Shown here: piece after piece, positions 17,111-47,780 of the stretch
Position numbering within the stretch: position 1 is the stretch's first letter
Layout of the letters: each line of letters starts with the position of its first letter
Source of the DNA: Piromyces finnis finn
Taxonomy: Eukaryota; Fungi; Neocallimastigomycota
Assembly (NCBI GenBank): GCA_002104945.1
Contig: MCFH01000105.1
Coordinates: forward strand, 1 to 53,689
Direction of reading: 5' to 3'
DNA: 53,689 bases
Notes under the pieces: generated by a model
What the model saw: only the letters and a program-made list of their open reading frames with translations
What the model was told of the DNA's origin: nothing
The model's database searches: none
Made by a program: the position numbers and the translations under genes

Positions 17111-17126
17111 ATTTCATTATTTTTTG

Positions 17127-17957
17127 TGTAAGAATTAATAATTATTTTTTGTATAAATTAATTCTTATTTAATTATTTTTTAATTATTAAATTAATTATT
17201 TATTTAAACTATTAGCATACATTCATTTAAATTACTATAAACATTTATCTATATTGATATTAATTATTCATTTACTTAATTTAAAATTTATTTAATTACT
17301 ATATTAATTATTTATTTATTTAATTTAGTAATATATTTAAAATAATAGTAAACATTCATTTATTTTTTAATTAATAATTTTTGTATTACATTTTATAAGA
17401 AACATTATATATTTTATTTTACGTTTGTATTTTATATTTATGTATCGTATCTTGAAATAACTTATAGAAACAATTAGAAAATATAAATACATATTAGGAC
17501 AATCGGATATTAAGGTTTTTCCGAATTTTAATCGGTTTTACTTAATATTACGATGATTGATATATTAGTTATCAATCGAATATCTTTTTAGGTTTTTCTT
17601 CTAGTCTTTTCCTAAAAAGATTATTTGTTAAGATTAGAAATTCTTTATTAAACTTTAAATTATCAAAAAATTATAAATATAAGGACTCTGGAATTCCACT
17701 AAAGAATCCAGAGTTATTATTTTAAGACAATTATAATAAATAACCCTTTCAAAAACTATATTCATAAAAAATATTTACATTAAAGATAGTCTTAATATTT
17801 TGTGTTTGTTATTATAATTCACTTATAATAAACTCTTTAAGATAAGTATTCATTTTTATTTACTATTAAGAAACTTCTCAATTTAATAATACATATTACG
17901 ATTTGTATTATTATATTGTAGATAATAATTATTATTAAATATATAATAATTATTACA
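17127..17957 (+). mobile_element. Solo LTR family A, copy 1, 16 bp upstream of tRNA-Ser
   Basis: TGTAAGAATT...TATTACA. TSD TTTTG; the right copy includes the TG of the next LTR. Homologues at 28312 and 41378. Confidence 0.9.
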
Positions 17958-17960
17958 TTT

Positions 17961-18582
17961 TGTCACAATAACATATATAAAAATTTAAAAAATTTGGACA
18001 CATGGAAAAAATTAAAAATTTTTTCAAAATTTGAAAATTTGAAAATTTGAAAAAATTTATTTTTTAAATTTTTATTAAAAAATTTCAAAGTATAAAATTT
18101 CTAATATTTGAAATTATTAAATTTTTTAAAATTTTTAAAATTTTATTATTAAAAATTTTAATTTAAATTTATTTATTAACTATTTACAATAATTATATTA
18201 ATTATTAATTTATAAAAATTAAATATTTTATAATTAGATAATAATTAATTAAAATTAAAAAATGTAATAATTAAAATTGTTCATGTATAAAAAGAACAAA
18301 AATTGACAAAAATTACGAAGCTTTAGCGTTAGTAATTTTTTAACTTAAAGTTAATAAAATTTATAAACTCCTATAAAACCTAAAACTTTAAAAATTTTAA
18401 TATTTTTAATAACTTAATATATGCTGATATTAAGTTATTGCTAAAATAAAAATATTATTTAATTTTCTTTATATAAATATTATTAGCTTTACGCCTTCAA
18501 TAGGAAAGCGTATTATATTTGTTAATTAATATAACTAGTGTGCTTACCACACTTTTCTTTAATAAAAAATCGCTTTTTGACA
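17961..18582. mobile_element. Solo LTR family B, copy 2
   Basis: Near-identical to 7467-9297 without its insert. Followed by TTTTT (TSD). Confidence 0.92.
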
Positions 18583-18602
18583 TTTTTGTGATACGTTACC
18601 TC

Positions 18603-19487
18603 TGTAAAATATTCTATTCTAAGTTCAGGTTTGTATACACTAAATCAAACTAACACTAGTTATAAATTTATTTATTATTAAACTTTATTTATTTATTAAA
18701 TTATATTAAACTAAACTAAACTAAAACAACCGTTGATTACTTTACCGTGAAGGTTATTTTACCAGAGCCCTCACTAGGTAATCAATTATTAATTAAAGCT
18801 AAACTAATTATTAACTAATGTTAATTTATCTAAACTAAATTAACCTATACCACTAACTATACGATTTTCCAACTATCGTTTCAATAGTTGACAAATTTTC
18901 TTTATTTATACTTTTTAAATAAATTGAATAAATTCTAATATACATGTTTTAATATTATAATTTTACATTGTTTACATTTATGCATTTATTAAAAGAAATT
19001 ATTTGTATTAAACTATTTAAATTCAATTTATTTACTAAAGAATTTTCTAAACTTAAAATAAAGTTTTGATTTAATTACTATATGGTTGATTATATTTCAA
19101 ACATATATTTAATTTATTTATTTCTAATTTTGAGGCTTAGTTTATAAAAAAAATTTTTTCTTATCTAAAATATTTATTGGTTGAAATTTATTTAATTTAA
19201 AAATTTTATTTTATCATCAAAAACTTTATCTTATCATAAAATTAGATTTACATAAATTTATGTTAATGTATTGTAATACATTATTTTATCGTAACTTTAG
19301 ATTTCACATAGATTTATGTTAATGTATTGTGATACATTATTTTATCGTAACTTTAGATTTCACATAGATTTATGTTAATGTATTGTGATATAAATTTTGT
19401 AAAGATTTACGGTACATTAATTCAATACATTGTACATTATTTTAAATACGTATTAAATACATTATTCTATTAATACAATATTTTACA
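18603..19487. mobile_element. Solo LTR family F, copy 1, in the 5' LTR of element 3
   Basis: TGTAAAATATT...AATATTTTACA (11-bp terminal inverted repeat) with TSD ACCTC. Confidence 0.92.
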
Positions 19488-20037
19488 ACCTCTATAAAAA
19501 TAAGAAATTAGCATAAATTCTAGGTAAAAAGTAATTTAGGTTAGAAAATAGTAATAATATAATATTGTAGAATAAATTATTAATGTACATTAATGTACAT
19601 AGTCAATAATAGTAATAATAATTCTAATAATATAGCGGAGTTATAGGAAAAATGATATAAAAATAGTATAAAAAGAACAAAGAGAAAAAAAAAAAAAAAG
19701 GAATAATTAGTTGAGAAGAATATTTTGGAAGAGAATTATTTAAAGGAGTTAAATAATTCTATTAGGTTATATTATTTGTTCTTAAATATAAATTATTCTT
19801 ATTCTTTTAATTGTAAAAAACCTTTCATTCATTAATTATAAATAAAGATTGAAGATATAACAAAAATATTATATAAATTACATGTTTCTTTCTTTCTATT
19901 TTACTTATTAAAAGTATTGAAATTGTTATTATTAATTTCCTTTATTAGAATATATTATTTTATAATTCCCTATTTGCTTTGTCCTAAAATAAATAAATTA
20001 TTTTGTGGTACTTTATGAAAATATTGTATCATAATTT

Positions 20038-20054
20038 TGGTGGAGAATCCGGGC
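20038..20054 (+). promoter_or_regulatory. Primer-binding site, tRNA-Ala type
   Basis: TGGTGGAGAATCCGGGC, matching the complement of eukaryotic tRNA-Ala 3' ends (...GCCCG(C/G)ATTCTCCACCA). Lies 6 nt after the LTR. Confidence 0.85.
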
Positions 20055-20378
20055 GAAGCAAAATAAAATAATATGAAAATAATAAAGAAAAAGAATTATA
20101 ATAGTTCCGTAATACTTTATTTAATTTAAATATTAATATTAATTTTATAAGTTTAATTATCTTTATATATATATTTTAACACTTACTTTATAAAAAAAAA
20201 AAAAAAATTTCTTAAGTAATCTCATTATAAATAATTATAATTTTTTGTTTAATTACTTTTTATTATATAAAAAAATAATACACATACATATATATTTATA
20301 ACAATAATATAAAAAAAAAAAAAAAAAAAAGAAAATTTAAATAAGCATATAATTGAAATTTGTTTTTTTTCTTCAAGT

Positions 20379-45390: not shown

Positions 45391-45396
45391 CAATAG

Positions 45397-46018
45397 TGAT
45401 AACGGATTGGTAGTTATATTACAACTTTTTAACTACTTCTTCTGTTATCTTATATTGTTTTATCTCGACAGCTATTGTACGAGCTTTAACAATATCTACT
45501 AGTTTTATTAATTTATTTTAAGTTATTTTATAATTTTAATAGTTTTATTATTTTAATAATATTTATATAGAATAATAACACCAGATTTATTCTATAAAAT
45601 ATTATTTATTATTAACACAATAATTACAAATTAGACAAGTTTAATTTCGTTTTTATATTTTCTTTTATTTATTGTTCTTACGCTCTTTTTAACAATAATT
45701 TTTATTATATAAAAACTTATTTTTTGTCTTTTAAATATTATTATGTATTCACTAATTAATTATATTAACTATTATTAAAATTTAACTTATTATTAGTAAT
45801 CTAAGTCTTCTCATTTTCTACTAAAAATTATTATTATTCTTTATAATAAAAATTATTTTTATAATTTAACCCAATCAAATATATAAATTTATAAAATATT
45901 TGATTTTATGTAAATTATATTTTTATAATAAACTATATAAAATTATTTAATAATTATTTTATAATAAAAATTTCTACTAATATCAAATGTATAATATATT
46001 TATAATTATTATTTATCA
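45397..46018. mobile_element. Solo LTR family N
   Basis: TGATAACGG...TTTATCA with TSD ATAG. Confidence 0.9.
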
Positions 46019-46022
46019 ATAG

Positions 46023-46643
46023 TGATAACGGAATGGTAGTTATTCTACAACTTTTTAAACTACTTATTCGTTACCTTATATTGTTTTATCTCGACAGCTA
46101 TTGTACGAGCTTTAACAATATCTACTTGTTTTATTATTTATTTTAATTTATTTTATAATATTTATAGTTTTATTATTTAATAATATTTATATAGAATAAT
46201 AACACCAGATTTATTCTATAAAATATTATTTATTATTAACACAATAATTACAAACTAGACAAGTTTAATTTCGTTTTTATATTTTCTTTTATTTATTGTT
46301 TTTATACTCTTTTTAACAATAATTTTTATTATATAAAAACTTATTTTTGTCTTTTAATTATTATTATGTATTATTTAACTAACTATATTAACTATTATTA
46401 AAAATTCAACTTCTTATTAATATGTTAAGTCATCCTATTTTCTACTAAAAATTATTATTATTCTTTATATTAAAAATTATTTTTATAATTTAACCCAATC
46501 AAATATATAAATTTATAAAATATTTGATTTTATGTAAATTATATTTTTATGCTAAACTATATAAAATTATTTAATAATTATTTTTATAATAAAACGTTCT
46601 ACAAATATCAAATTTATAATATATTTATAATTATTATTTATCA
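46023..46643. mobile_element. Solo LTR family N, tandem second copy
   Basis: Direct, slightly diverged repeat of 45397-46018, separated from it by ATAG. Confidence 0.9.
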
Positions 46644-46644
46644 T

Positions 46645-47266
46645 TGTCAAAAAGCGATATTTTATTAAAGAAAAGTGTGGTAAGCACACTAGTTATATTA
46701 ATTAACAAATATAATACGCTTTCCTATTGAAGGCGTAAAGTTAATAATATTTATATAAAGAAAATTAAATAATATTTTTATTTAAGTAATAACTTAATAT
46801 CAGCATATATTAAGTTATTAAAAATATTAAAATTTTTAAAGTTTTAGGTTTTATAGGAGTTTATAAATTTTATTAACTTTAAGTTAAAAAATTACTAACG
46901 CTAAAGCTTCGTAATTTTTGTCAATTTTTGTTCTTTTTATATATGAACAATTTTAATTATTACATTTTTTAATTTTAATTAATTATTGTCTAATTATAAA
47001 ATATTTAATTTTTATAAATTAATAATTAATATAATTATTGTAAATAGTTAATAAATAAATTTAAATTAAAATTTTTAATAATAAAATTTTAATAATTTTA
47101 AAAAATTTAATAATTTCAAATATTAGAAATTTTATACTTTGAAATTTTTTAATAAAAATTTAAAAAATAAATTTTTTCAAATTTTCAAATTTTCAAATTT
47201 TAAAAAAATTTTTAATGTTTTCCATGTGTCCAAATTTTTTAAATTTTTATATATGTTATTGTGACA
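46645..47266. mobile_element. Solo LTR family B, copy 5 (inverted)
   Basis: Reverse complement of B. No clean TSD. Confidence 0.9.
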
Positions 47267-47273
47267 AGAATTA

Positions 47274-47769
47274 TGTAAAAGGTTTATTATAATATTAGTT
47301 AATAGGTTATTAAATTAGTTAATTAAGTTAGTTATTACCTCTCTATACGAGTTAATAACTAAATAAAGTTTTATAAAAAATAATAAAAGAAGGAAAATAA
47401 ATATTATAACACTAAAATAAATATAAACACTTATATAAATATTTTATGAAATAACTTTTACTTAAATAATTATATTTTAATTATATCTTTTATTTATTAA
47501 TTATAATTATCTACATTAATTATTATTATAGTTATTAATTTACTTTAATACTAACGCTAAAGTATTTAACGTTAGTTTTGACTATACTATTTAACTATAT
47601 GAGTTTATTTTCTTTACCACTTGATTGGGTAAAGCAAATAAACTTCCTATTTAATTAATAACCATTAATATATGGTTATGCATATATTTGGCCAATAAAT
47701 GGTGACCAGAATATATGGTTTCAATTGAAATATTTGTGGGCAAACTTATGGCCACAAATATTTCTTACA
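47274..47769. mobile_element. Solo LTR family M, ending 11 bp upstream of tRNA-Arg
   Basis: TGTAAAAGG...TTCTTACA with TSD AATTA. 13-bp stem GAAATATTTGTGG/CCACAAATATTTC near its end. Confidence 0.85.
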
Positions 47770-47780
47770 AATTAAAAGTG

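What the first reader, a model, noticed from the sequence alone, without database searches (positions are those of the whole stretch)
17111..47780. A 30.6-kb tRNA-anchored LTR stack that records insertions in order
Seen: between divergent tRNA-Ser (5' end 17110) and tRNA-Arg (5' end 47781) there is essentially no non-retroelement DNA. About 30 LTRs or elements from about 15 families abut with 1-7 bp spacers. Established: Ty3, Ty1 and Dictyostelium DGLT-A/TRE5 target tRNA upstream regions. Inference: each new insertion lands at a fixed distance from the tRNA and pushes older ones outward, giving a polar, time-ordered archive comparable in logic to a CRISPR array. Lost termini (TATCA to TATTA at 40131) and broken pieces lie in the middle, where the oldest should be. 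I know of no description of multi-family stacking on this scale in this kind of genome, but have not searched the literature.
Basis: partly seen in the sequence, partly recalled or inferred. Interest (0 to 1): 0.92.

Follow-up and report, generated by a model that had tools for sequence, protein, structure and literature searches.

The report
tRNA-anchored stacks of LTR retrotransposons
In this very AT-rich gut-fungus genome, about 30 Ty3-like jumping genes from about 17 families inserted one after another at fixed distances in front of two tRNA genes that point away from each other. The resulting 30.7-kb pile can be peeled back insertion by insertion. The targeting itself is the kind known from yeast Ty3, here on an unusual scale and in a fungal group where I found no description of it.

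Summary
Between tRNA-Ser(TGA) (17028-17111, minus) and tRNA-Arg(TCT) (47781-47854, plus), all but 119 of 30,669 bases are LTRs or LTR-element interiors. I count about 30 insertions from about 17 families, with 0-7 nt between layers.

- Serial in-silico excision from tRNA-Ser restores an exact target-site duplication (TSD) in 9 of 10 steps.
- From tRNA-Arg, 8 of 14 steps are exact in the run; B4 adds a ninth if read as a 6-nt duplication, 3 have one mismatch and M3 keeps 3 of 4 nt.
- At every step the front layer sits 11-17 nt from the tRNA.

Refinements:
- Families use three registers: 10-17 nt, 28-29 nt (family C) and 64-66 nt (families E and I). Some insertions therefore nest inside the front LTR.
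- The centre (35994-38010) is not simply the oldest part. It has two joints without duplications and may be the remnant of a third stack whose tRNA was lost.
- Identity to the nearest other copy falls with rank (Spearman -0.86, n=24, mixed proxy).

This is Ty3/DGLT-A-type Pol III-gene targeting. I found no description of it for anaerobic gut fungi. The scan noted the same phenomenon at eight or more other tRNA loci of this genome, and one earlier follow-up reached the same reading. The CRISPR comparison is only formal.

The parts
17028..17111 (-). tRNA-Ser(TGA), anchor of the left stack
   Evidence: ARAGORN. At least 20 near-identical copies elsewhere in the genome.
17112..17126 (.). 15-nt spacer. 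Its first 9-10 nt survive every reconstruction step.
   Evidence: Serial excision.
17127..17957 (.). A1, solo LTR of family A, front layer. TSD ttttg includes the TG of B1.
   Evidence: 100% identical to many genomic copies.
17961..18582 (.). B1, solo LTR of family B. TSD ttttt after removing A1; was 13 nt from the tRNA.
   Evidence: 99.8% identical to the B copy at 7467-8039.
18589..28304 (+). D, full-length Ty3/gypsy element. LTRs at 18589-20031 (interrupted) and 27754-28304. ORFs for gag, PR-RT and RH-IN. TSD tttg; was 14 nt from the tRNA.
   Evidence: Pfam. Ty3 is the top PDB match. LTR pair differs by 4 substitutions in 551 nt. Excision.
18603..19487 (.). C1, family C LTR nested at nt 14 of D's 5' LTR. 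TSD acctc; reconstructed distance 28 nt.
   Evidence: Best genomic copy 98%.
28312..31234 (.). A2, family A LTR carrying two nested LTRs. TSD tgttg includes the TG of G; was 17 nt from the tRNA.
28324..29160 (.). C2, family C LTR nested at nt 12 of A2. TSD attaa; reconstructed distance 29 nt.
   Evidence: Best genomic copies 97-98%.
29203..30305 (.). E1, family E LTR nested at nt 49 of A2. TSD aatta; reconstructed distance 66 nt.
   Evidence: Contig C128 has an E at the same site and with the same TSD, but inverted.
31238..32374 (.). G, solo LTR with termini like D's. TSD ttgt after peeling; was 15 nt from the tRNA.
   Evidence: Genomic copies up to 99%. A G copy lies 14 nt from a tRNA-Ser on contig C220.
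32378..35311 (-). H, non-coding TRIM-like element: two LTRs, a 794-nt interior, a PBS starting TGGTGGAGAATCC and a purine tract. Was 14 nt from the tRNA.
   Evidence: Sequence. Same LTR-interior-LTR unit in L024 and L025. LTR pair differs by 12 substitutions in 575 nt.
32428..33391 (.). I, family I LTR nested 50 nt into the proximal H LTR. TSD agtga; reconstructed distance 64 nt.
   Evidence: Family I lies 66 nt from tRNA-Arg in L004 and L019.
35318..35993 (.). J, deepest layer of the tRNA-Ser stack. It lacks the last ~55 nt seen in other copies of its family.
35987..35994 (.). Tail-to-tail joint of J and K' at a shared AACTACA motif, with no TSD. Inferred microhomology deletion.
   Evidence: Comparison with complete J/K-type LTR ends in L003, L009 and window 4513-5147. 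The same joint is present in contig C128.
35994..36635 (.). K', truncated LTR of family K, inverted relative to J.
   Evidence: 98.9% identical to the LTR at window 1-375..
36637..37255 (.). B2, family B LTR, inverted. Joined by the 6-nt aaatta to an N-type LTR end, as at B0 and B4.
   Evidence: 99.7% identical to B4, while the adjoining N pieces are only 92% identical.
37262..37311 (.). N2 fragment: the terminal 50 nt of an N-type LTR.
37312..37959 (.). O, LTR of an abundant family, with no TSD. Its right joint to the H fragment looks like a deletion.
   Evidence: Forty or more genomic copies at 95-96% with these limits. Flanks.
37960..38010 (.). H fragment: about 50 nt of an H-type LTR end. 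Deepest remnant of the tRNA-Arg stack.
38016..38621 (.). H3, H-type LTR. TSD aaaa.
   Evidence: Best genomic copy 94%.
38626..39320 (.). M5, M-type LTR. TSD aaaa.
   Evidence: Best genomic copy about 89%.
39325..40131 (.). N, solo LTR ending TATTA. Near-TSD aaaa/aaat.
   Evidence: Best genomic copy 94%.
40138..40756 (.). B4, family B LTR. Exact 6-nt TSD aaatta after peeling; was 12 nt from the tRNA.
   Evidence: My reading of the flanks printed; the run itself tested 5 nt and found 2 mismatches. B0 has the same 6-nt TSD. Genomic copies up to 99%.
40758..41374 (.). M4, family M LTR. TSD acaa includes the terminal ACA of B4.
   Evidence: Best genomic copy 97%.
41378..42278 (.). A3, family A LTR, inverted relative to A1. 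TSD caaca includes the terminal CA of M4.
42286..43245 (.). H4, H-type LTR with an expanded (TTA)n tract. TSD caaa after peeling.
   Evidence: Best genomic copy 98%.
43249..43828 (.). P, solo LTR with termini like D's. Near-TSD acaa/ataa.
   Evidence: Best copies 96-97%.
43833..44521 (.). Q, solo LTR. Near-TSD ataa/atag.
   Evidence: The family lies 15-16 nt from tRNA-Arg in L002 and L012.
44525..45390 (.). R, A-like LTR. TSD caata includes the terminal CA of Q.
   Evidence: Many genomic copies at 99%.
45397..46018 (.). M2, family M LTR. TSD atag.
46023..46643 (.). M3, family M LTR. Used the same atag target; one base was lost at the B3 joint.
   Evidence: 99.4% identical to a copy in L002.
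46645..47266 (.). B3, family B LTR, inverted, with no TSD (aberrant integration).
47274..47769 (.). L, front layer on the tRNA-Arg side. TSD aatta; 11 nt from the tRNA.
   Evidence: 99.8% identical to copies in L015 and L016.
47781..47854 (+). tRNA-Arg(TCT), anchor of the right stack.
   Evidence: ARAGORN. At least 34 identical copies in the genome.

Best explanation
The 30.7-kb interval is the product of repeated, position-specific integration of many families of Ty3/gypsy-type LTR retrotransposons, and their non-coding derivatives, just upstream of tRNA genes.

How the stack grows:
- Most families integrate with a 4-6 bp staggered cut about 10-17 nt upstream of the mature tRNA 5' end.
- Each new copy therefore lands between the tRNA and the previous copy and pushes older layers outward.
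- Most copies were later reduced to solo LTRs.
- Family C uses a register at 28-29 nt, and families E and I one at 64-66 nt. These insert inside the LTR that is at the front at the time.

What is in this interval:
- Two stacks grew towards each other from the divergent tRNA-Ser and tRNA-Arg.
- Between them lies a short eroded block with two deletion joints. It may be the remnant of a third stack whose tRNA was deleted.

Shown: the anatomy, the TSD chain, the registers, the polarity, and the Ty3 relatedness of the encoded pol.

Inferred: that integrase is tethered to the Pol III initiation complex (TFIIIB) as in Ty3, with different geometries giving the three registers.
For: 1. tRNAs and complete LTR cover.

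2. Serial excision.
- tRNA-Ser side: 9 of 10 TSDs exact. Front distances 13-17 nt. Nested C at 28 and 29 nt; nested E and I at 66 and 64 nt.
- tRNA-Arg side: 14 layers at 11-17 nt, with 8 TSDs exact in the run and 3 with one mismatch. B4 becomes a ninth exact one if read as the 6-nt aaatta visible in its flanks, as at B0.

3. TSDs that contain the terminal TG or CA of the neighbouring LTR fix the order. These are A1>B1, A2>G, M4>B4, A3>M4 and R>Q (younger first). The polarity is opposite on the two sides.

4. Other tRNA loci, about 18 independent contexts.
- The first LTR terminus lies 11-16 nt upstream, for families A, B, H, J/K, L, M, N, Q and R, at tRNA-Arg, Ser, Gly and Glu.
- E lies at 64-66 nt and I at 66 nt.
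- By coordinates: C lies 28 and 29 nt, G 14 nt, and B 10 and 11 nt from tRNAs.

5. tRNA-Arg paralogues share their downstream flank and the 8-14 nt spacer but carry different LTR families upstream. These are therefore independent hits at the same position.

6. Contig C128 is a copy of window 30303-38434 with about 0.2% substitutions. It has a different E copy (3.3% diverged) at the same nucleotide and with the same TSD, but inverted.

7. Age.
- LTR-pair divergence is 0.7% for D (rank 3) and 2.1% for H (rank 6).
- Identity to the nearest other copy falls with rank, Spearman -0.86, n=24.

8. pol has the order PR-RT-RH-IN. The best PDB match is Ty3 Gag-Pol, entry 7q5b, E=4e-129.

9. Literature.
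- Ty3 integrates about 15 bp upstream of the mature tRNA 5' end.
- DGLT-A averages 15 bp.
- The two D. lacteum DGLT-A families lie at 55-65 bp (PMC5006619, PMC5911963).
Against:
- B3 has no TSD. M3, N, P and Q have imperfect ones.
- The joints J|K' and O|H-fragment cannot be explained by integration.
- The junctions B-a-M and N-aaatta-B recur within the window and on other contigs. I read this as repeated precise insertion into paralogous contexts, but block duplication is not excluded.
- Many copies of these families lie on large contigs whose surroundings I could not fetch. So the fraction of copies away from Pol III genes is unknown.
- The identity proxy mixes genome-wide searches with a 250-kb local sample.
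- The assembly is not verified by long reads. Public Logan contigs were too short.
- tRNA-Leu(CAA) at 49670-49752 has no LTR upstream, so not every tRNA is hit.
Confidence: 0.87

Rival explanations
1. This is a generic repeat-rich region (heterochromatin or centromere-like). Transposons pile up by nesting into each other and the tRNA genes are incidental.
For: - The whole 53.7-kb contig is rich in LTR elements, including the parts downstream of tRNAs at 9384-17027.
- Many tRNA loci sit on small, repeat-only contigs.
Against: - The front LTR terminus sits 10-17 nt from the tRNA at about 20 loci.
- The TSDs of successive layers are all cut from the same few spacer bases, and the proximal 9-10 nt never change.
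- Random nesting would interrupt LTRs at arbitrary positions. Here nesting occurs only at 12-14 nt or 49-50 nt from the proximal LTR end.
Confidence: 0.03
2. The elements target the termini of resident LTRs rather than the tRNA. The integrase or a chromatin reader would recognise LTR ends, so stacks would grow wherever one LTR has landed.
For: - Nearly every insertion is within 0-7 nt of another LTR's end.
- Several TSDs include 1-3 terminal bases of the neighbour.
Against: - The distance to the tRNA is constant whichever family is next door.
- Growth is always on the tRNA side of the previous layer, with polarity from TSD overlaps.
- In L006 and L010, an E sits 65 and 66 nt from two divergent tRNAs in DNA that matches none of the LTR families in my library.
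- tRNA paralogues have different first layers at the same position.
Confidence: 0.04
3. Much of the structure comes from segmental or inverted duplication of blocks, or from assembly redundancy, not from about 30 separate insertions.
For: - Contig C128 duplicates 8 kb of the window at 99%.
- Several fetched loci are near-duplicates of each other: L006/L010, L004/L005/L011 and L007-L009.
- The B-a-M and N-aaatta-B junctions recur.
- Deep-layer pairs such as M5+N and O+H3 are contiguous on other contigs at 85-89%.
Against: - Most layers carry their own exact TSD.
- Where junctions are shared, the two partners differ very differently in divergence. B2/B4 are 99.7% identical but the adjoining N pieces 92%. 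B3/B4 are 98.9% identical but M3/M4 94.4%. This fits separate insertions into paralogous contexts, not one copied block.
- Duplication of tRNA loci clearly happened. It explains the paralogues, not the layers.
Confidence: 0.06

Closest known systems
Ty3 of Saccharomyces cerevisiae (Metaviridae; integrase tethered to TFIIIB)
   Same: - pol order PR-RT-RH-IN.
- Best solved-structure match is Ty3 Gag-Pol, entry 7q5b (E=4e-129).
- TG..CA LTRs and 4-6 bp TSDs.
- Integration about 15 nt upstream of the mature tRNA 5' end, in either orientation (PMC5006619).
   Different: - About 17 families rather than one use the site.
- Stacks reach 14 layers.
- Additional registers exist at 28-29 and 64-66 nt.
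- The TFIIIB interaction is untested here.
- The host is an early-diverging anaerobic fungus.
DGLT-A elements of dictyostelid amoebae, including the D. lacteum DGLT-A.1 and DGLT-A.2 families
   Same: - Ty3/gypsy elements without a chromodomain.
- Mean distance 15 bp upstream of tRNA genes.
- The two D. lacteum families sit at 63-64 and 55-65 bp, much like families E and I here (PMC5006619).
   Different: - Dictyostelid families have tens of copies and mostly single insertions per tRNA.
- In the dictyostelids the registers are spread over different species, not stacked on one tRNA.
- Phylogenetic relationship was not tested.
Tj1-Tj10 of Schizosaccharomyces japonicus
   Same: Many Ty3/gypsy families in one fungal genome cluster together with tRNA genes. 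Tj1 integrates 1-10 bp upstream of the Pol III start site (PMC5911963).
   Different: - Those clusters are centromeric or telomeric.
- A base-by-base ordered stack and multiple registers are not mentioned in the passages I read.
- The chromosomal location of the present contig is unknown.
CRISPR arrays
   Same: New units are added at one fixed end, so position encodes relative time.
   Different: - No repeat-spacer architecture, acquisition machinery, transcript processing or defence function.
- The order is a passive by-product of site-specific integration.

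Membership tests
Ty3/gypsy (Metaviridae) LTR retrotransposons | pol domain order protease, reverse transcriptase, RNase H, integrase | tested here: met
   Pfam on ORFs 21583-23964 and 24693-26612 (element D) and on 771-4352.
Ty3/gypsy (Metaviridae) LTR retrotransposons | Sequence homology of pol to Ty3 | tested here: met
   PDB entry 7q5b, Ty3 Gag-Pol, is the top hit, with E=4e-129 and 2.7e-41.
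Ty3/gypsy (Metaviridae) LTR retrotransposons | Direct LTRs with TG..CA ends, short TSDs, PBS after the 5' LTR, purine tract before the 3' LTR | tested here: met
   - Termini and TSDs.
- D and H have TGGTGGAGAATCC 5 nt (D) and 2 nt (H) after the LTR, and a purine-rich tract before the other LTR.
Ty3-like Pol III-gene targeting | Insertions confined to a narrow window about 15 bp upstream of the mature tRNA 5' end | tested here: met
   10-17 nt at about 20 tRNA loci and at every step of both reconstructions.
Ty3-like Pol III-gene targeting | Either orientation relative to the tRNA | tested here: met
   Families L, M and B occur with either end proximal.
Ty3-like Pol III-gene targeting | Dependence on an integrase contact with TFIIIB (Brf1/TBP) and on a functional Pol III promoter | not testable with these tools
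   Inference only.
Ty3-like Pol III-gene targeting | Other Pol III genes (5S rRNA, U6) are also targets | not tested
Chromoviruses (integrase with a C-terminal chromodomain) | Chromodomain after the integrase core | tested here: not met
   - No chromodomain family among the Pfam hits of the two pol ORFs.
- The last 124 residues of D's integrase ORF align to nothing in the PDB.
- Only two elements were examined.
TRIM/LARD-type non-autonomous LTR elements (element H) | LTR pair, PBS and purine tract around a short non-coding interior; several copies with the same interior | tested here: met
   Element at 32378-35311, with no ORF of 150 aa or more. The same 794-nt interior lies between H LTRs in L024 and L025.
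CRISPR-like adaptive array | Repeat-spacer units, dedicated acquisition genes, use of the record | tested here: not met
   The layers are whole LTRs from unrelated families. In the window, every ORF of 150 aa or more that has a Pfam match carries retroelement domains; three such ORFs have no Pfam match.

The most novel reading that the evidence does not exclude
About twenty LTR-retrotransposon families in one anaerobic-fungus genome share the tRNA-upstream niche by using three discrete integration registers: about 13-15, 28-29 and 64-66 nt. These would reflect three different docking geometries on the Pol III initiation complex. Because positioning is accurate to the nucleotide, every tRNA gene carries a base-resolution, cross-datable chronological record of transposon activity. 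Genome-wide, this could give a relative timeline of all family bursts and of tRNA-gene duplications.
Probability: 0.45. Interest if true: 0.7.

Novelty: new member of a known kind. Interest (0 to 1): 0.55.

Why it matters
- It extends Ty3-type targeting of Pol III genes to early-diverging, anaerobic gut fungi. I found no paper describing this in four searches.
- It offers an unusually clean natural experiment. Many families, three sharp registers and stacks up to 14 layers deep can be undone base by base.
- That makes testable how different integrases read the same TFIIIB/Pol III landmark, how fast tRNA-upstream sites turn over, and how tRNA gene families and their flanks duplicate.
- Practically, such stacks probably account for many of the small repeat-only contigs in this assembly and should be annotated as such.
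- It is not a new kind of system, and the 'archive' is a by-product rather than a function.

Tried and rejected
1. I first took TGATAAT..TTATCA (33394-33942 and its likes) for a separate family inserted 47 nt into another LTR. This was rejected: with the 47-nt piece it forms one LTR of the minus-strand element H, which has a PBS and purine tract.

2. I read the ~730-nt break in D's pol (about 23946-24700) as a foreign insertion away from any tRNA. This was rejected: it is bounded by GT..AG, and the reading frame resumes after it. A related element at 11307-11932 has the same stretch.

3. I considered B-a-M and N-aaatta-B to be copied blocks. This is disfavoured because the partners diverge unequally.

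4. I looked for a TSD for B3 at 3-6 nt and found none.

5. The fetch from genomes stopped after one call and genome-search loci after six.
- The genome-wide tally of what lies upstream of all tRNAs could not be made.
- The converse tally (where all copies of each family lie) could not be made.
- Contig C128 could not be extended beyond 9139.

6. Read laying on 16900-22800 with four runs gave only short Logan contigs. None bridges the junctions.
- LTR bins are roughly 3-200 times deeper than the interior of D, which fits high copy number.
- This is no verdict on the assembly.

7. The identity-versus-rank correlation rests on hand-collected best hits from different searches. Treat it as indicative.

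Full report
**What the window is**

The window is a whole 53.7-kb contig (C8) of a 56.5-Mb, 232-contig, very AT-rich genome. Earlier notes of this scan identify it as an anaerobic gut fungus.

ARAGORN finds four tRNA genes:
- tRNA-Arg(tct) at 9310-9383 (plus)
- tRNA-Ser(tga) at 17028-17111 (minus)
- tRNA-Arg(tct) at 47781-47854 (plus)
- tRNA-Leu(caa) at 49670-49752 (minus)

The finding concerns the interval between the divergent Ser and Arg genes.

**Observation**

Self-BLAST, and BLAST against 26 other loci fetched from the same genome, cover the interval with repeats. The only exception is the interior of one full-length element.

I read the sequence and set boundaries from TG..CA termini, alignment ends and flanks. 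This gives 26 top-level pieces and 4 nested LTRs.

- tRNA-Ser side: A1, B1, D (full length, with C1 nested), A2 (with C2 and E1 nested), G, H (a non-coding LTR-interior-LTR element, with I nested), J.
- Central block: K', B2, a 50-nt N-type fragment, O.
- tRNA-Arg side: an H fragment, then H3, M5, N, B4, M4, A3, H4, P, Q, R, M2, M3, B3, L.

Spacers are 0-7 nt between layers and 15 and 11 nt next to the tRNAs. They total 119 of 30,669 nt.

The elements are of Ty3/gypsy type.
- The pol domain order is PR-RT-RH-IN.
- The best solved-structure match is the Ty3 Gag-Pol chain of PDB entry 7q5b, at E=4e-129 for the ORF at 771-4352 and 2.7e-41 for D's RH-IN ORF.

**The stack can be undone step by step**

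On the tRNA-Ser side I excised each element together with one copy of its TSD, working from the tRNA outward.
- TSDs matched exactly in 9 of 10 steps: A1 ttttg, B1 ttttt, C1 acctc, D tttg, C2 attaa, E1 aatta, A2 tgttg, G ttgt, I agtga. H has ttttg/ttttt, one mismatch.
- After each step the next layer began 13-17 nt from the tRNA 5' end.
- The first 9-10 nt of the spacer never changed.

On the tRNA-Arg side the same procedure kept the front layer at 11-17 nt through 14 layers.
- Exact TSDs in the run: L, M2, R, H4, A3, M4, M5 and H3.
- B4 also has an exact duplication if read as the 6-nt aaatta visible in its flanks. The run itself tested 5 nt and found 2 mismatches.
- One mismatch: Q, P and N.
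- M3 reused M2's atag target, with one base missing at the B3 joint.
- B3 has no TSD.

Several TSDs contain the terminal TG or CA of the neighbouring LTR. These are A1 over B1, A2 over G, M4 over B4, A3 over M4, and R over Q. They prove which element was there first. The polarity is younger-towards-tRNA on both sides, and so opposite in window coordinates.

**Three registers**

Nested insertions are not at random places.
- C1 and C2 lie 14 and 12 nt inside the then-front LTR. Their reconstructed distances from the tRNA are 28 and 29 nt.
- E1 and I lie 49-50 nt inside, at 66 and 64 nt.

The same numbers recur elsewhere.
- E lies at 66, 65, 66 and 64 nt, and I at 66 nt (one I copy lies at 97 nt, in L015/L016), from tRNA-Arg, tRNA-Glu and tRNA-Gly in the window's other stack and in loci L004, L006, L019 and L020.
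- C copies end 28 and 29 nt from a tRNA-Arg on contig C184 and a tRNA-Ser on contig C227, by coordinates.
- Families A, B, G, H, J/K, L, M, N, Q and R have their termini 10-17 nt from tRNAs (by coordinates).
- In L006 one E sits 65 and 66 nt from two divergent tRNAs.

The literature gives about 15 bp for Ty3 and DGLT-A, and 55-65 bp for the two D. lacteum DGLT-A families (PMC5006619, PMC5911963).

**The tRNA is the landmark, not the neighbouring LTR**

- The 23 tRNA-Arg(TCT) copies sampled fall into paralogue groups. Each group shares 120 nt or more of downstream flank and the proximal 8-14 nt upstream. Members then diverge exactly at an LTR terminus, with different families in different members.
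- The same LTR family sits at the same distance from different tRNA species.
- Contig C128 is a copy of window 30303-38434, with about 16 substitutions and 11 indels in 7.6 kb. It carries an E copy at the same nucleotide of the A LTR with the same TSD, but inverted and 3.3% diverged from E1.
- I read that as two independent hits on one exact site after the two copies split.
- L018 and L019 form a similar pair, without and with an I insertion.

**Age**

- D (rank 3) has 4 substitutions in 551 nt between its LTRs. H (rank 6) has 12 in 575 nt.
- Front layers match other genomic copies at 99-100%: A1 100%; L 99.8%, B1 99.8%, M3 99.4%; R 99%.
- Deep layers match at 89-97%: J 97%; O 96%, N 94%, H3 94%, M5 89%.
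- Over 24 top-level layers the Spearman correlation of rank with best identity is -0.86.
- The proxy is heterogeneous. Some values come only from my 250-kb local sample and are lower bounds. C1 and H4 rose from 85% in the local sample to 98% genome-wide.

**The centre**

- J and K' meet tail to tail at a shared AACTACA. Both lack the last ~50 nt seen in complete copies of their families. A microhomology deletion explains this.
- O has no TSD, and its right neighbour is not the continuation of the N-type LTR on its left. That suggests a second deletion.
- Both joints are also present in C128. They are therefore older than the split of the two copies and are supported by an independent contig.
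- K' and B2 are young (98.9% and 99.7% to other copies).
- B2 is joined to its N-type neighbour by the same aaatta that forms the 6-nt TSD of B0 and B4 upstream of tRNA-Arg genes.
- I therefore think the segment 35994-37959 is the remnant of a third stack built on a tRNA-Arg paralogue that was lost in the J|K' deletion. My confidence is about 0.5.

**Exceptions and limits**

- B3 lacks a TSD.
- The B-a-M junction recurs at B3/M3, B4/M4 and on contigs C187 and C13. M4's exact TSD acaa includes B4's terminal ACA. Also, M3 and M4 are only 94% identical while B3 and B4 are 98.9% identical. I therefore favour repeated precise insertion over block copying.
- tRNA-Leu(CAA) has no LTR upstream.
- Public Logan contigs were too short to confirm junctions.

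**Comparison and novelty**

- This is Ty3/DGLT-A/Tj-type targeting of Pol III genes. The elements pass the Ty3/gypsy membership tests. Dependence on TFIIIB is inferred, not tested.
- Four literature searches found nothing on tRNA-targeted elements in Neocallimastigomycota.
- New here are the host lineage, the number of families, the depth of the stacks and the coexistence of three sharp registers on the same genes.
- The scan's notebook lists eight further first-reader notes of such stacks at other tRNA loci of this genome. One earlier follow-up reached the same conclusion, including a second register at 61-65 nt. First-reader notes on this same window describe the peelable TSD chain and the fourteen LTRs upstream of tRNA-Arg. 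I reproduced both independently.
- The CRISPR comparison is a formal analogy only.

Noticed in passing
window 1-9297: A third stack lies upstream of tRNA-Arg(9310).
- The family B LTR (7467-8039 plus 9244-9297) sits 12 nt from the tRNA with a 6-nt TSD aaatta. It is split by an inverted E (8040-9243, TSD atata) 66 nt from the tRNA.
- Further out are an N-type end, another E (5148-6183) and a full-length family K element (1-5147) with an intact 1193-aa polyprotein ORF. The contig start cuts that element.
   Followed up: partly
window 49670-53689: tRNA-Leu(CAA) has no LTR upstream, and nothing from my LTR library matches up to the contig end. Not every tRNA gene is a used target.
   Followed up: partly
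L021 (contig C128:1-9139) versus window 30303-38434: A second contig carries the same deep layers with about 0.2% substitutions, including both joints that lack TSDs. It has a different E copy, inverted, at the identical site. Whether it is an allele or a paralogue is unknown.
   Followed up: partly
window 23946-24700 and 11307-11932: The pol gene of element D is interrupted by a ~730-nt non-coding stretch bounded by GT..AG, after which the reverse-transcriptase frame resumes. A 90% similar stretch lies inverted at 11307-11932. It looks like an intron retained in a retrotransposon.
   Followed up: partly
window 13111-16664: A young element lies 364 nt downstream of tRNA-Ser. Its LTR pair differs by 1 substitution in 612 nt, and it encodes only gag and protease domains. 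A different family with a different position relative to the tRNA.
   Followed up: no
window 47982-48970: A long array of a 15-nt tandem repeat lies just downstream of tRNA-Arg. It contains a 303-aa ORF with no Pfam match.
   Followed up: no
window 42830-43210: A (TTA)n microsatellite inside LTR H4 has expanded to about 380 nt. Other H copies have about 20-30 nt at this place.
   Followed up: no
L007, L008, L009 (about 53 nt upstream of tRNA-Arg): In a tRNA-Glu/tRNA-Arg tandem pair an LTR end abuts the 3' half of tRNA-Glu. The insertion destroyed the upstream tRNA of the pair.
   Followed up: no
G000 contigs C79:829244-848220 and C74:3780-21612: Family G LTRs recur with a 5.57-kb period. These are tandem arrays of elements sharing LTRs, a sign of unequal recombination.
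   Followed up: no
L001-L020 and window: At least 34 identical tRNA-Arg(TCT) genes fall into paralogue groups that share 120 nt or more of downstream flank. The tRNA genes themselves were multiplied by segmental duplication.
   Followed up: partly
window 30671-30893 versus 17536-17616: A 71-nt unit inside family A LTRs varies in copy number: one in A1 and in the C128 copy, three in A2.
   Followed up: no
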